Shown here piece by piece: positions 1 through 37,877 of a DNA stretch of 64,000 bases. Each line of letters opens with the position of its first letter. The first letter of the stretch is position 1. This stretch comes from Blepharisma stoltei ATCC 30299 (lineage: Eukaryota; Protista; Ciliophora), in assembly GCA_965603825.1 (NCBI GenBank), contig CBFDEM010000054.1, forward strand, positions 1 to 64,000. The letters run 5' to 3'. The notes under the pieces are model-generated. The model saw nothing but the letters and a program-made list of their open reading frames with translations, searched no databases and was not told the DNA's origin. The translations under genes were made by a program, and so were the position numbers.

Positions 1-3000
1 AACACCCTAACACCCTAACACCCTAACCCCTAACACCCTAACACCTCTAACACCCTAACACCCTAACACCCTAACACCCTAACACCCTAACACCCTAACA
101 CCCTAACACCCTAACACCCTAACACCCTAACACCCTAACACCCTAACACCCTAACACCCTAACACCCTAACACCCTAACACCCTAACACCCTAACACCCT
201 AACACCCTAACACCCTAACACCCTAACACCCTAACACCCTAACACCCTAACACCCTAACACCCTAACACCCTAACACCCTAACACCCTAACACCCTAACA
301 CCCTAACACCCTAACACCCTAACACCCTAACACCCTAACACCCTAACACCCTAACACCCTAACACCCTAACACCCTAACACCCTAACACCCTAACACCCT
401 AACACCCTAACACCCTAACACCCTAACACCCTAACACCCTAACACCCTAACACCCTAACACCCTAACACCCTAACACCCTAACACCCTAACACCCTAACA
501 CCCTAACACCCTAACACCCTAACACCCTAACACCCTAACACCCTAACACCCTAACACCCTAACACCCTAACACCCTAACACCCTAACACCCTAACACCCT
601 AACACCCTAACACCCTAACACCCTAACACCCTAACACCCTAACACCCTAACACCCTAACACCCTAACACCCTAACACCCTAACACCCTAACACCCTAACA
701 CCCTAACACCCTAACACCCTAACACCCTAACACCCTAACACCCTAACACCCTAACACCCTAACACCCTAACACCCTAACACCCTAACACCCTAACACCCT
801 AACACCCTAACACCCTAACACCCTAACACCCTAACACCCTAACACCCTAACACCCTAACACCCTAACACCCTAACACCCTAACACCCTAACACCCTAACA
901 CCCTAACACCCTAACACCCTAACACCCTAACACCCTAACACCCTAACACCCTAACACCCTAACACCCTAACACCCTAACACCCTAACACCCTAACACCCT
1001 AACACCCTAACACCCTAACACCCTAACACCCTAACACCCTAACACCCTAACACCCTAACACCCTAACACCCTAACACCCTAACACCCTAACACCCTAACA
1101 CCCTAACACCCTAACACCCTAACACCCTAACACCCTAACACCCTAACACCCTAACACCCTAACACCCTAACACCCTAACACCCTAACACCCTAACACCCT
1201 AACACCCTAACACCCTAACACCCTAACACCCTAACACCCTAACACCCTAACACCCTAACACCCTAACACCCTAACACCCTAACACCCTAACACCCTAACA
1301 CCCTAACACCCTAACACCCTAACACCCTAACACCCTAACACCCTAACACCCTAACACCCTAACACCCTAACACCCTAACACCCTAACACCCTAACACCCT
1401 AACACCCTAACACCCTAACACCCTAACACCCTAACACCCTAACACCCTAACACCCTAACACCCTAACACCCTAACACCCTAACACCCTAACACCCTAACA
1501 CCCTAACACCCTAACACCCTAACACCCTAACACCCTAACACCCTAACACCCTAACACCCTAACACCCTAACACCCTAACACCCTAACACCCTAACACCCT
1601 AACACCCTAACACCCTAACACCCTAACACCCTAACACCCTAACACCCTAACACCCTAACACCCTAACACCCTAACACCCTAACACCCTAACACCCTAACA
1701 CCCTAACACCCTAACACCCTAACACCCTAACACCCTAACACCCTAACACCCTAACACCCTAACACCCTAACACCCTAACACCCTAACACCCTAACACCCT
1801 AACACCCTAACACCCTAACACCCTAACACCCTAACACCCTAACACCCTAACACCCTAACACCCTAACACCCTAACACCCTAACACCCTAACACCCTAACA
1901 CCCTAACACCCTAACACCCTAACACCCTAACACCCTAACACCCTAACACCCTAACACCCTAACACCCTAACACCCTAACACCCTAACACCCTAACACCCT
2001 AACACCCTAACACCCTAACACCCTAACACCCTAACACCCTAACACCCTAACACCCTAACACCCTAACACCCTAACACCCTAACACCCTAACACCCTAACA
2101 CCCTAACACCCTAACACCCTAACACCCTAACACCCTAACACCCTAACACCCTAACACCCTAACACCCTAACACCCTAACACCCTAACACCCTAACACCCT
2201 AACACCCTAACACCCTAACACCCTAACACCCTAACACCCTAACACCCTAACACCCTAACACCCTAACACCCTAACACCCTAACACCCTAACACCCTAACA
2301 CCCTAACACCCTAACACCCTAACACCCTAACACCCTAACACCCTAACACCCTAACACCCTAACACCCTAACACCCTAACACCCTAACACCCTAACACCCT
2401 AACACCCTAACACCCTAACACCCTAACACCCTAACACCCTAACACCCTAACACCCTAACACCCTAACACCCTAACACCCTAACACCCTAACACCCTAACA
2501 CCCTAACACCCTAACACCCTAACACCCTAACACCCTAACACCCTAACACCCTAACACCCTAACACCCTAACACCCTAACACCCTAACACCCTAACACCCT
2601 AACACCCTAACACCCTAACACCCTAACACCCTAACACCCTAACACCCTAACACCCTAACACCCTAACACCCTAACACCCTAACACCCTAACACCCTAACA
2701 CCCTAACACCCTAACACCCTAACACCCTAACACCCTAACACCCTAACACCCTAACACCCTAACACCCTAACACCCCTAACACCCTAACACCCTAACACCC
2801 TAACACCCTAACACCCTAACACCCTAACACCCTAACACCCTAACACCCTAACACCCTAACACCCTAACACCCTAACACCCTAACACCCTAACACCCTAAC
2901 ACCCTAACACCCTAACACCCTAACACCCTAACACCCTAACACCCTAACACCCTAACACCCTAACACCCTAACACCCTAACACCCTAACACCCTAACACCC

Positions 3001-36816: not shown

Positions 36817-36966
36817 ATGCTGGATGAATATGTAGTGGGTTCTTTGCTAGTAATAGTGATTGTATTTGTTATTGCAATTACCTACTTTACTATGAGAAAT
36901 ATGAAATATGAAGATCTAATTGTTATGAATGATCAATTTGTTTACTATGGGAAGAAATTTAATTAA
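36817..36966 (+). CDS. Putative 49-aa single-TM microprotein
   Basis: MLDEYVVGSLLVIVIVFVIAITYFTMRNMKYEDLIVMNDQFVYYGKKFN*; one clean TM helix. Confidence 0.5.
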   Translation: MLDEYVVGSLLVIVIVFVIAITYFTMRNMKYEDLIVMNDQFVYYGKKFN

Positions 36967-37233
36967 AGATTTTGTATTTCAATTAATAAATGAAAATAAA
37001 CATATTCGATTAAAAATTGTTTTTCTATGAAATTTCAAGCCAAGGCGGCTCTTTTTTATTGCAATTCCCTTTTGTATATGCATTTCTAAATACTTCTATT
37101 TTCACATGCCAAAAGAAATTTACCCAGTATAGCATAAATAATTTTTCCAGAATTAAAGCTAAAGTGAAAGTAATCACATTTAATTATAAAATTTTAATAT
37201 AATACCGATTTTGATAATTGATTAATAAGTTAA

Positions 37234-37289
37234 ACACTCCTCAATATAGAGACCCTGTAAGTTTGCTCCCTATACTTCACATAGAGTGT
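37234..37289 (-). promoter_or_regulatory. Eukaryotic SECIS element (GUGA core, type II-like)
   Basis: Minus-strand RNA: ACACUC-UAU-GUGAA-GUAUAGGGAGC-AAA-CUUACAGG-GUCUCUAUAU-UGAG-GAGUGU. Helix I is ACACUC/GAGUGU, the core is a UGAA/UGAG tandem G.A quartet, helix II is ~10 bp, and the apex has AAA plus a mini-stem. Confidence 0.85.
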
Positions 37290-37307
37290 ATTGCCCAATC
37301 TTCTGGG

Positions 37308-37877
37308 CTAACGTCATCCTCCTTTTTTATTAAGATCAACGCCTATGTCATTCCACGTTGCCTTTTTTCCACATCCTTTCGCTTGAGGTTTTGAATCTTG
37401 AGTCGGCAATAAGTGGGTATTCGTCTCTTTTCTGTCTAATCTAGCTTGATCTAAAAGCCTTTTTTTGGCTTCTTCTTTAGCTTTCATTTCTTCTCTGATA
37501 GCTCTTTGTTGTCTTTCACGTTCTTTTTCTTCTTCAGATTTTAAAAGTTCATTAATTTCTGATGAAGTTACTTCTATGATTGGCAGAGCAATGTCCAGTA
37601 TTTCAACTGCACTAGAAAATTCATAGTCAGGGCCATTATCTCTATAGCCGATAAGATATAAAATGTCATTAATATTGCGAAGAGACAACAGCTTAGTTTG
37701 TATAGCTTTATTTGTTTTTTTTATTGACCTGAATTTGGCTTCTTCAGGGTGTTCAGATATATTTTGAAGTAATTTGATTAGGATTAAAATCCCATTTTGA
37801 GCATTGTTTGGTCCATTTTCTTGGATTAATTGTTGAAGGCGATGGTATATTTGGGTGTCAAGATCTTCTGACTCCAT
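37308..37877 (-). CDS. PUB-domain protein, candidate selenoprotein ending GG-U-R (189 aa, Sec188)
   Basis: PUB motif LIKLLQNISEHPEEAKFRSIKKTNKAIQTKL...LYLIGY, then a coiled coil, then GGA GGA TGA CGT TAG. A SECIS lies in the 3' UTR. Confidence 0.85.

What the first reader, a model, noticed from the sequence alone, without database searches (positions are those of the whole stretch)
37277..37316. Dual meaning of UGA (Trp vs Sec) with very short UGA-SECIS spacing and a proximal hairpin
Seen: UGA is Trp throughout the window. Here only 33 nt separate the UGA from the SECIS core, and a GC-rich hairpin GCCCA-GAAGAU-UGGGC (37293-37308) begins 5 nt after the UGA, overlapping the UAG stop. Established: Euplotes decodes UGA as Cys or Sec depending on SECIS context; mammalian systems need roughly 50 nt or more of spacing; and stem-loops just 3' of Sec codons modulate recoding. 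Inference: here Sec insertion competes with a Trp-tRNA rather than with termination. The compact hairpin+SECIS module may pause the ribosome and select this UGA, with failure yielding a full-length Trp variant, possibly Se-dependent.
Basis: partly seen in the sequence, partly recalled or inferred. Interest (0 to 1): 0.8.

Follow-up and report, generated by a model that had tools for sequence, protein, structure and literature searches.

The report
Selenocysteine recoding cassette in Blepharisma
This stretch is the end of a real selenoprotein gene in a ciliate that otherwise reads UGA as tryptophan.

Summary
On the minus strand a 187-codon PUB-domain ORF ends GG-UGA(37316-37314)-CGU-UAG(37310-37308). 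A 5-bp hairpin (37293-37308) follows, then a SECIS (37234-37289) whose GUGA core starts 33 nt after the UGA.

The genome is a Blepharisma macronuclear assembly that uses UGA as a sense codon. It has tRNA-Sec, SPS, a GCUG-ending TrxR and a Sec-GPx. Six orthologues keep UGA-CGA-stop plus a SECIS with compensatory changes, and transcript-like contigs cover the SECIS. Sec decoding here is therefore very likely.

The principle is not new: UGA meaning Trp or Sec, with a very short spacing, was described for Condylostoma and Parduczia (Swart 2016). Other notes of this scan found SelS-like and SelW-like selenoprotein genes in this genome.

The hairpin is inconsistent: it is clearly significant in 2 of 5 B. 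stoltei modules and in 1-2 of 6 orthologues (one marginal). What is new:
- All five penultimate-Sec genes found share UGA-SGY-UAG-NY-CARAAGAUUG and a 32-33 nt spacing.
- All five use UAG, which ends 10% of long ORFs in the window.
- UGA is followed by C in four of them (G in TrxR); C follows 4% of Trp-UGAs.
- One gene carries a Trp-UGA and a Sec-UGA in the same mRNA.

Short spacing also occurs in relatives showing no in-frame UGA among the few Trp codons sampled. Verdict: a new variant of a known kind.

The parts
37308..37877 (-). Coding sequence of the PUB-domain selenoprotein. It has 187 sense codons, then UGA, CGU and the UAG stop. The protein ends ...DIGVDLNKKGG-U-R.
   Evidence: Translation. 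Pfam PUB PF09409, E=1.6e-16. Ten 187-188-aa homologues all stop being called exactly at this UGA.
37314..37316 (-). The penultimate UGA codon, read as selenocysteine.
   Evidence: UGA, not UGG, is kept in six orthologues that share about 50% protein identity. The SECIS lies 33 nt downstream. The genome has tRNA-Sec.
37308..37313 (-). CGU (Arg) followed by the UAG stop. This gives the UGA-C context and a UAG stop.
   Evidence: All five B. stoltei modules read UGA-SGY-UAG. UAG ends only 3 of 30 long ORFs in the window. The base after UGA is C at only 4 of 92 Trp-UGAs.
37296..37307 (-). Conserved linear element NY-CARAAGAUUG, here CC-CAGAAGAUUG, at +7 to +18 after the UGA.
   Evidence: It is identical in position in five genes of four unrelated families. 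It is the only 7-mer that all five 3' regions share. It is identical in a TrxR transcript 96% identical in protein, and partly kept (AUGAUAAGAUCG) in a TrxR 78% identical.
37293..37308 (-).
   Evidence: -8.7 kcal/mol, P about 0.002 against shuffles. The pairing is not conserved across the other modules or the orthologues.
37234..37289 (-). SECIS element. Helix I is 37289-37283 with 37240-37234. The 5' internal loop AUGUGA is 37282-37277 (GUGA core 37280-37277). Helix II is 37276-37267 with 37252-37243. AAA is at 37264-37262 and the 3' GA at 37242-37241.
   Evidence: Fold. In seven orthologues 8 of 17 pairs show changes on both sides, 0 of 500 shuffles reach the observed values, and slid controls are far lower.
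37209..37233 (-). Tail of the 3' UTR, from the end of the SECIS to the transcript end.
   Evidence: Transcript-like contigs of four runs end at 37209, 37209, 37217 and 37271, and leave 36920-37208 uncovered.

Best explanation
The stretch is the recoding cassette of a genuine selenoprotein mRNA of Blepharisma.

The next-to-last codon, UGA, is decoded by Sec-tRNA(UCA), delivered through a GUGA-type SECIS. That SECIS sits at an almost fixed 31-34 nt downstream, with helix I starting 22-25 nt after the UGA. With UGA in the A site the SECIS therefore stands just ahead of the ribosome.

Four things mark this UGA as Sec rather than Trp:
1. The nearby SECIS.
2. Its place in the last codons of the ORF, a zone where ordinary Trp-UGAs are avoided.
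3. A UGA-C context followed by a UAG stop.
4. In the Blepharisma lineage, an invariant linear element CARAAGAUUG at +9 to +18. That puts it at the mouth of the mRNA entry channel, and I infer that a trans-acting factor recognises it.

The focal hairpin is a local way of folding that element, not the conserved determinant.

Shown: the anatomy, the conservation, the covariation, the Sec machinery and the transcript coverage. Inferred: that Sec is actually inserted, that the motif acts in decoding, and which factor binds it.
For: Sec system in this genome:
- tRNA-Sec at 75.6 bits with anticodon UCA.
- SPS/SelD at 213.9 bits.
- TrxR ending GCUG-stop.
- A GPx with U at the active site.

The focal gene:
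- Six orthologues keep UGA-CGA-stop plus a SECIS 31-34 nt on.
- The SECIS shows covariation.
- RNA-like contigs span 37209-37869.

The shared module:
- A pattern search plus a strict SECIS scorer found five genes sharing UGA-SGY-UAG-NYCARAAGAUUG at 32-33 nt spacing: PUB, TrxR, C12, C25 and C41a. No convincing module lacked the motif.
- Stop plus motif occurs 15 times genome-wide against 8 for the reversed control. Five of the 15 are these genes.
- All five use UAG, against 10% of long ORFs.
- The base after UGA is C in four of five, against 4% of Trp-UGAs.
- In a congener TrxR transcript, third codon positions differ at 16.4% but the 3' UTR at only 3 of 108 nt, with none of those in the 21 nt after the UGA.

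Dual use within one mRNA:
- The C25 gene has an upstream UGA that aligns with a Trp of its paralogue, as well as the penultimate UGA.

Literature:
- UGA as Trp/stop/Sec with a SECIS 'shortly' after the TrxR Sec codon in Condylostoma and Parduczia (PMC4967479).
- Blepharisma has tRNA-Sec(UCA) and a tRNA-Trp(CCA) with a 4-bp anticodon stem (10.1101/2023.10.09.561518).
Against: - There is no direct evidence of Sec in the protein: no mass spectrometry, 75Se labelling or ribosome profiling.
- Rfam SECIS models do not score this element.
- The motif is absent from PUB orthologues and from TrxR genes of more distant relatives. Those work with other spacers, so the motif is not required for short-range Sec decoding in general.
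- No partner for the motif was found. 18S rRNA shows only chance-level complementarity, and there is no conserved complement in cis.
- The survey only detects modules with an A-W-GUGA core and the layout UGA-codon-stop.
- Two further motif-plus-core hits could not be inspected.
- The RNA runs are only guessed to be RNA, and they are contigs, so the poly(A) site is approximate.
Confidence: 0.7

Rival explanations
1. The GC-rich stem-loop works like a Sec redefinition element: it stalls the ribosome with UGA in the A site so that eEFSec can out-compete Trp-tRNA. On this view the secondary structure is the functional unit.
For: - The hairpin is significant in the focal gene (P about 0.002) and in TrxR (P 0.015-0.02). 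Both start at the G of UAG, 5 nt after the UGA, which is a typical distance for recoding stimulators.
- Summed over eight spacers, folding energy is lower than in every one of 2000 shuffles.
- TrxR genes of related ciliates carry a different, conserved GC-rich hairpin at the same place.
- The TrxR hairpin is unchanged in a congener.
Against: - Three of five B. stoltei modules have no significant pairing (C12 P=0.11, C25 P=0.74, C41a P=0.42), although they keep the motif letter for letter.
- Four of six PUB orthologues have no hairpin at all.
- No compensatory changes support the stem; the conservation is in primary sequence.
Confidence: 0.12
2. The compactness is a by-product of the very short 3' UTRs of heterotrich ciliates. 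The shared motif serves something other than codon choice, for example mRNA stability, localisation, selenium-dependent regulation, or termination at the UAG.
For: - Ciliate 3' UTRs are mostly under 100 nt, and those of heterotrichs are especially short (10.1101/2022.04.12.488043).
- The whole TrxR 3' UTR, not just the motif, is conserved in the congener.
- The GPx SECIS acts from about 380 nt away and abuts its own stop codon.
- The invariable UAG suggests a link to termination.
Against: - The spacing is 31-34 nt in 12 of 14 complete modules across two gene families and several species. That is much tighter than a general push for shortness predicts.
- The motif is found at selenoprotein stops and, apart from one subtelomeric repeat family, not at other stops.
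- The motif is at a fixed distance from the UGA.
Confidence: 0.12
3. The UGA is simply tryptophan, as elsewhere in the genome, and the downstream stem-loop is not a working SECIS.
For: - UGA makes up about half of the putative Trp codons in the window.
- Rfam SECIS models give no hit.
Against: - The codon is UGA and never UGG in seven orthologues. These include contigs where all other Trp codons seen are UGG.
- SECIS covariation.
- The same cassette follows the textbook GCUG end of TrxR.
- Gly-Gly-Sec-Arg-stop resembles the SelK and SelS ends (from memory, not tested).
Confidence: 0.03
4. The shared 12 nt are conserved because they code in the -1 frame, where the five modules read T/R-L-x-Q-K-I-x. 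The one variable base would then be a synonymous Gln position.
For: - In the -1 frame, CAR is Gln and YUA is Leu, so both variable positions are synonymous (read from alignment A8).
- In the TrxR 78% identical in protein, AUU becomes AUC, which is also synonymous.
Against: - The Lys codon (AAG) and the Ile codon (AUU) never vary among the five genes.
- No slippery site is shared.
- The -1 frames of the six PUB orthologues show no conserved peptide (read from the sequences).
- The GCUG end of TrxR is the well-established functional terminus.
Confidence: 0.02

Closest known systems
UGA 'triality' (Trp/stop/Sec) in Condylostoma magnum and Parduczia sp. (Swart et al. 2016, PMC4967479)
   Same: Heterotrich or karyorelict ciliates in which UGA is Trp and, with a SECIS, Sec. 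[quoted passage not shown]
   Different: In those species UGA is also the regular stop. The passages I read describe no quantified fixed spacing, no shared sequence element, no set of penultimate-Sec genes, and no PUB selenoprotein.
Euplotes crassus UGA = Cys or Sec (Turanov et al. 2009; follow-up PMC3737529)
   Same: One codon gives two amino acids. Sec insertion is limited to the C-terminal UGA, and upstream UGAs in the same mRNA are read as the standard amino acid. The SECIS type sets that limit.
   Different: The competitor there is Cys-tRNA. The stop-to-SECIS-core distance is 124-138 nt rather than about 27 nt, and no UGA-adjacent sequence motif is reported.
Sec redefinition element (SRE) of SEPN1 and other UGA-adjacent stem-loops (Howard et al. 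2005; from memory, with the term confirmed in the library)
   Same: A cis element that starts about 5-6 nt 3' of the Sec UGA, separate from the SECIS, and is proposed to raise Sec decoding.
   Different: An SRE is defined by a phylogenetically conserved stem-loop inside coding sequence. Here the conserved feature is an invariant linear 10-12 nt in the 3' UTR, shared between unrelated genes of one lineage, with variable pairing.
Mammalian TR1 position-dependent Sec insertion (PMC3737529)
   Same: A penultimate Sec in GCUG, with a SECIS that supports Sec only at or near the natural position.
   Different: The spacing is about 220 nt, the competitor is eRF1, and no dual sense meaning is involved.

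Membership tests
Eukaryotic SECIS element (kink-turn type) | Core quartet: (A/G)UGA on the 5' strand opposite GA on the 3' strand, between two helices. | tested here: met
   GUGA at 37280-37277 faces GA at 37242-37241, between a 7-bp helix I and a 10-bp helix II. GUGA and GA are invariant in seven orthologues.
Eukaryotic SECIS element (kink-turn type) | Unpaired AA(A) in the apical loop or bulge, about 10-13 nt after the core. | tested here: met
   AAA at 37264-37262, 12 nt after the UGA of the core. A26 and A27 are invariant in the alignment.
Eukaryotic SECIS element (kink-turn type) | Helices supported by compensatory substitutions. | tested here: met
   8 of 17 pairs change on both sides and 89.9% of cells are paired. 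0 of 500 shuffles reach the observed values, and slid controls give 37-52% paired.
Eukaryotic SECIS element (kink-turn type) | Match to a curated SECIS covariance model (Rfam SECIS_1). | tested here: not met
   No hit at the gathering threshold or at E<=10. The one genome-wide hit is a false positive inside a PP1 gene. The bona fide TrxR and GPx SECIS of this genome are missed as well, so the model does not fit these GUGA-type elements.
Eukaryotic SECIS element (kink-turn type) | Binds SBP2 and directs Sec insertion. | not testable with these tools
   Needs binding or reporter assays.
Selenoprotein gene | In-frame UGA conserved as UGA (or Cys) in orthologues, with a SECIS in the 3' UTR of the transcript. 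| tested here: met
   UGA is kept in all seven orthologues. Transcript-like contigs include the SECIS.
Selenoprotein gene | Sec machinery present in the genome. | tested here: met
   tRNA-Sec and SPS. eEFSec, SBP2, PSTK and SepSecS were not searched.
Selenoprotein gene | Selenium found in the protein. | not testable with these tools
   Needs 75Se labelling or mass spectrometry.
Sec redefinition element (SRE) | A stem-loop a few nt 3' of the Sec UGA, with its pairing conserved in evolution. | tested here: not met
   The position fits, starting 5 nt after the UGA. The pairing is significant in only 2 of 5 B. stoltei modules and in 1-2 of 6 orthologues (one marginal), with no covariation.
Sec redefinition element (SRE) | Raises Sec insertion or readthrough at the adjacent UGA. 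| not testable with these tools
   Needs reporter assays.

The most novel reading that the evidence does not exclude
Blepharisma has evolved a lineage-specific linear RNA signal, UAG-NY-CARAAGAUUG, at the ribosome's mRNA entrance. Together with a SECIS held about 33 nt from the codon, it licenses Sec at a penultimate UGA and shuts out both the near-cognate Trp-tRNA(CCA) and residual eRF1 activity. This would be a second, sequence-specific cis-determinant of Sec decoding, read by a still unknown trans factor. It would explain how one mRNA (the C25 gene) can carry a Trp-UGA and a Sec-UGA.
Probability: 0.35. Interest if true: 0.75.

Novelty: new variant of a known kind. Interest (0 to 1): 0.55.

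Why it matters
How a ribosome tells a Sec-UGA from an ordinary UGA is well studied where the alternative is termination. It is much less studied where the alternative is another amino acid.

Blepharisma gives a compact natural test set: five small cassettes. Each has the same spacing, the same stop codon, the same +4 context class and the same 10-nt element. A sixth gene, GPx, has a distant SECIS and none of these features, and one mRNA has both kinds of UGA.

This makes three questions directly testable with reporters, ribosome profiling and mass spectrometry:
- Does proximity alone select the codon?
- Can a linear mRNA element at the entry channel bias Sec against Trp or release?
- How short can a UGA-SECIS distance be?

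It also shows that current SECIS models miss GUGA-type ciliate elements, so the selenoproteomes of such genomes are under-annotated.

Tried and rejected
- Rfam SECIS models on the window, on the 250-nt region and genome-wide found nothing useful; the one hit lay inside a PP1 gene.
- A covariance model built from the focal SECIS alone (R1) and one from the seven orthologues (R2) are too family-specific. TrxR and GPx score only 5-14 bits and the genome scan returned only the focal element. A model-based selenoproteome was therefore not possible.
- MAFFT could not align the PUB, TrxR and GPx SECIS elements together.
- Pfam SelK/SelG and SelO gave no match in the genome. The Rdx hits gave no clear CxxU gene in the loci I held.
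- The motif has no meaningful complement in 18S rRNA, at best 7 contiguous pairs including G-U. It has no conserved complement in the 3' UTRs. By eye, tRNA-Sec offers only 5 bp.
- One scan of JGI metagenome contigs for the whole module found nothing, so congeners could only be reached through TrxR.
- I considered a -1 frame coding reading and a tiny-intron reading of the conserved block and rejected both. The Lys and Ile codons are invariant, there is no GU...UAG 15-16-nt intron, and orthologues show no conserved -1 peptide.
- The Pfam scan of the C12, C25 and C41a proteins gave nothing above threshold.
- Two further motif-plus-core hits (contig 12 at 529238-529267, minus strand; contig 46 at 154944-154973, plus strand) could not be read.

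Full report
**Where we are.** The window starts with CCCTAACA telomere repeats. It belongs to a 41.46-Mb, 64-contig assembly. Together with sense use of UGA, this identifies a Blepharisma macronuclear genome. The literature calls the 41-Mb reference B. stoltei ATCC 30299, and I use that name as an inference. In ORFs of at least 250 codons in the window, trimmed to their first ATG, 77 TGA and 78 TGG occur in frame. In a PP1 phosphatase gene of the same genome, TGA stands where Trp is expected; I read this from recalled PP1 motifs, not from an alignment.

**The observation.** On the minus strand an ORF runs from ATG 37877 and ends GGA GGA UGA CGU UAG.
- UGA is 37316-37314 and UAG is 37310-37308.
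- The hairpin GCCCA/GAAGAU/UGGGC occupies 37308-37293.
- A SECIS-shaped stem-loop occupies 37289-37234. It has a 7-bp helix I, an AUGUGA loop opposite GA, a 10-bp helix II and AAA in the loop.
- The GUGA core begins 33 nt after the UGA.
- The spacer folds at -8.7 kcal/mol, which 0.2-0.3% of shuffles equal.

**Is it a selenoprotein gene?**
- The genome has a tRNA-Sec with anticodon UCA (75.6 bits).
- It has a Cys-type SPS/SelD.
- It has a thioredoxin reductase ending GCUG-UAG.
- One GPx of seven complete copies has U at the active site.
- The focal protein has a PUB domain.
- Ten 187-188-aa homologues from ciliate metagenome contigs all end exactly where the UGA lies.
- For six of them I read the DNA. 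All continue UGA-CGA-UAG or UGA-CGA-UAA, followed by a GUGA-type SECIS.
- On an alignment of the seven SECIS elements, 8 of 17 pairs change on both sides and 90% of cells are paired. No shuffle of 500 reaches the observed values, and slid controls drop to 37-52%.
- Contigs of four small, transcript-like runs cover 37209-37869 but not the intergenic 36920-37208. The mRNA therefore carries the hairpin, the SECIS and about 25 nt more. The runs are only guessed to be RNA.

I conclude that Sec decoding at this UGA is very likely, although it has not been shown directly.

**What was already known.** Swart et al. 2016 (PMC4967479) state that in Condylostoma and Parduczia UGA is Trp, stop and, with a SECIS, Sec. 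[quoted passage not shown] In Euplotes, UGA is Cys or Sec depending on position, with a stop-to-SECIS-core distance of 124-138 nt. The 51-nt mammalian minimum is quoted there too (PMC3737529). A 2023 preprint shows the B. stoltei tRNA-Sec(UCA). It reports that Blepharisma decodes UGA with a tRNA-Trp(CCA) that has a 4-bp anticodon stem, with no C-to-U editing of the anticodon. Other notes of this scan report SelS-like and SelW-like selenoprotein genes in this genome. Neither the dual meaning nor the short spacing is a new principle.

**Testing the hairpin.**
- TrxR has UGA-GGC-UAG, a 6-bp hairpin that also starts at the G of UAG, and a GUGA core 33 nt after the UGA.
- A pattern for 'UGA, one codon, stop, 22-28 nt, A-W-GUGA, 9-12 nt, AAA' was combined with a strict helix scorer. 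True modules score 12-16; most of the roughly 60 other hits score 10 or less. Two reach 11-12, and I set them aside as too long.
- This found five genes: the focal PUB gene, TrxR, two paralogous TM-plus-coiled-coil proteins on contigs 12 and 25 (ending CATGTUR and CKRSRGUR), and a 49-aa MGNCF... protein on contig 41 (ending PCWTGUR). A sixth cassette has no ORF and looks like a relic.
- Spacer folding is significant for the focal gene (P=0.002) and TrxR (0.015). It is marginal for C12 (0.11) and absent for C25 (0.74) and C41a (0.42).
- Among the six PUB orthologues, one has a significant but unrelated hairpin (P=0.01), one is marginal (0.06), and four have none.
- TrxR genes of more distant relatives carry a different, conserved GC-rich hairpin and a 40-41 nt spacing.

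Hairpins are enriched overall: the summed energy beats all 2000 shuffles. They are not the conserved feature.

**What is conserved.**
- All five B. stoltei cassettes align without gaps as UGA-SGY-UAG-NY-CARAAGAUUG (alignment A8).
- AAGAUUG is the only 7-mer shared by the five regions from -60 to +190.
- Stop plus motif occurs 15 times in the genome against 8 for the reversed control. Five are these genes and six are one subtelomeric repeat family.
- Motif plus core occurs 7 times against 2 for the control, and five of the seven are these genes.
- The five genes belong to four unrelated families, and their SECIS stems differ. The block is therefore under selection, not simply inherited.
- All five use UAG, which ends only 3 of 30 long ORFs in the window.
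- The base after UGA is C in four and G in one. Among 92 Trp-UGAs in untrimmed ORFs of the window it is C in 4. Arg is always CGN.
- Spacing is 32-33 nt in the five B. stoltei genes and 31-34 nt in the six PUB orthologues of other species.
- A TrxR transcript 96% identical in protein is probably B. japonicum, because it comes from MMETSP. It differs at 16.4% of third codon positions but at only 3 of 108 3'-UTR positions, and none of those lie in the 21 nt after the UGA.
- A TrxR 78% identical in protein keeps AUGAUAAGAUCG at the same offset.
- PUB orthologues of other species lack the motif.

**How it most likely works.** This paragraph is inference. From general knowledge of ribosome footprints, with UGA in the A site the ribosome covers about 12-15 nt downstream. 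The motif (+9 to +18) then lies at the channel entrance, and SECIS helix I (from +23 to +26) lies just outside. The SECIS-bound factors are held next to the A-site side of the ribosome. An invariant sequence with variable pairing, and with no conserved complement in 18S rRNA or in cis, points to a protein or other trans factor. The +4 C, the invariable UAG and published evidence point to a three-way contest between Sec-tRNA, Trp-tRNA(CCA) and eRF1. That evidence is that Blepharisma eRF1 reads UGA weakly in vitro, and that UGA is depleted 25-30 codons before stops. In the window, the nearest Trp-UGAs to a stop are 10, 11 and 35 or more codons away.

**Limits on the 'proximity selects the codon' idea.**
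- The Sec-GPx has its SECIS about 380 nt from the UGA, starting right after its stop, and has no motif.
- PUB orthologues and a TrxR from contigs with 12 UGG and no in-frame UGA have the same or similar short spacing. Two other orthologue contigs do use UGA for Trp. Compactness therefore probably predates, or is independent of, UGA=Trp, and fits the generally short 3' UTRs of these ciliates.
- In favour of position-specific decoding, the C25 mRNA has a UGA at codon 26 that aligns with a Trp of its paralogue, in addition to the penultimate UGA.
- Trp codons in the six selenoprotein ORFs are 13 UGG to 1 UGA, against about 1:1 in the window. This is suggestive only, because codon use varies a lot between genes.

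**Verdict.** The general phenomenon is known. The fixed spacing, the shared linear element, the UAG and +4 signature, and the in-mRNA dual use are, as far as I could find, not described.

Noticed in passing
L007:1501-2379 (same contig as the window, 198012-198890, + strand): A paralogue of the focal gene. Its N-terminal half is 50% identical over the PUB region and is fused to a thioredoxin-like domain with WCGPC. It has 292 aa and no Sec. PUB domains in this genome are repeatedly joined to redox modules.
   Followed up: partly
L067:1555-1974 (- strand) and L080:1581-2009 (+ strand): Two paralogous proteins of 142-151 aa with one TM segment and a coiled coil, ending C-x4/5-U-R. Their architecture resembles SelS. 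Pfam finds nothing. The L080 copy has an upstream UGA aligned with Trp of the L067 copy, so one mRNA has both Trp-UGA and Sec-UGA.
   Followed up: partly
L081:1857-2009 and L081:2480-2560: A 49-aa candidate selenoprotein, MGNCF...PCWTGUR, which may be N-myristoylated. About 480 nt downstream lies a second cassette (UGA-AAC-UAG, a degenerate motif, a good SECIS) with no ORF in front of it. This looks like a decayed tandem copy.
   Followed up: partly
L015 (- strand; Sec codon at oriented nt 1597; SECIS L015:1300-1359): One GPx gene has Sec (VACEUG); the other six complete copies have Cys or a variant motif. Its SECIS starts directly after the UAA stop and about 380 nt from the UGA.
   Followed up: partly
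L049:1420-2520: The only SelD/SPS gene has Cys (GCSCK) rather than Sec at the active site.
   Followed up: no
window 37277-37282; L036:1922-1927; L015 3' UTR; L037-L045: Every SECIS seen here and in the related ciliate contigs has a GUGA core, not AUGA. Rfam SECIS_1 misses all of them, so selenoproteins in these genomes will be under-annotated.
   Followed up: partly
L086, L090, L092, L093, L095, L096 (around position 1500 of each; near contig ends): A repeated, mostly subtelomeric sequence family contains UAG-NY-CAAAAGAUUG by chance or by descent. It shows no UGA or SECIS context.
   Followed up: no
Contig 12 at 529238-529267 (- strand) and contig 46 at 154944-154973 (+ strand) of the same genome: Two more places have CARAAGAUUG followed 10-20 nt later by AAGUGA. 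They could be further selenoprotein cassettes with a different stop layout, or chance, since the control gave 2.
   Followed up: no
L146:2135-2175; L148:2325-2366: TrxR genes of two related ciliates share a conserved GGCCUGGGCCUGGCC element directly after UGA-GGC-UAG, and have a 40-41 nt spacing. This is a different, structure-rich solution at the same place.
   Followed up: partly
L039:2848-3564 versus L044:2226-3567: In the orthologous carboxypeptidase M14 genes next to the PUB gene, one contig uses TGA where the other has TGG-Trp. Closely syntenic ciliate contigs therefore differ in UGA usage.
   Followed up: partly
window 1-2000: The window begins at a chromosome end with CCCTAACA telomere repeats, including a few variant units.
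   Followed up: no
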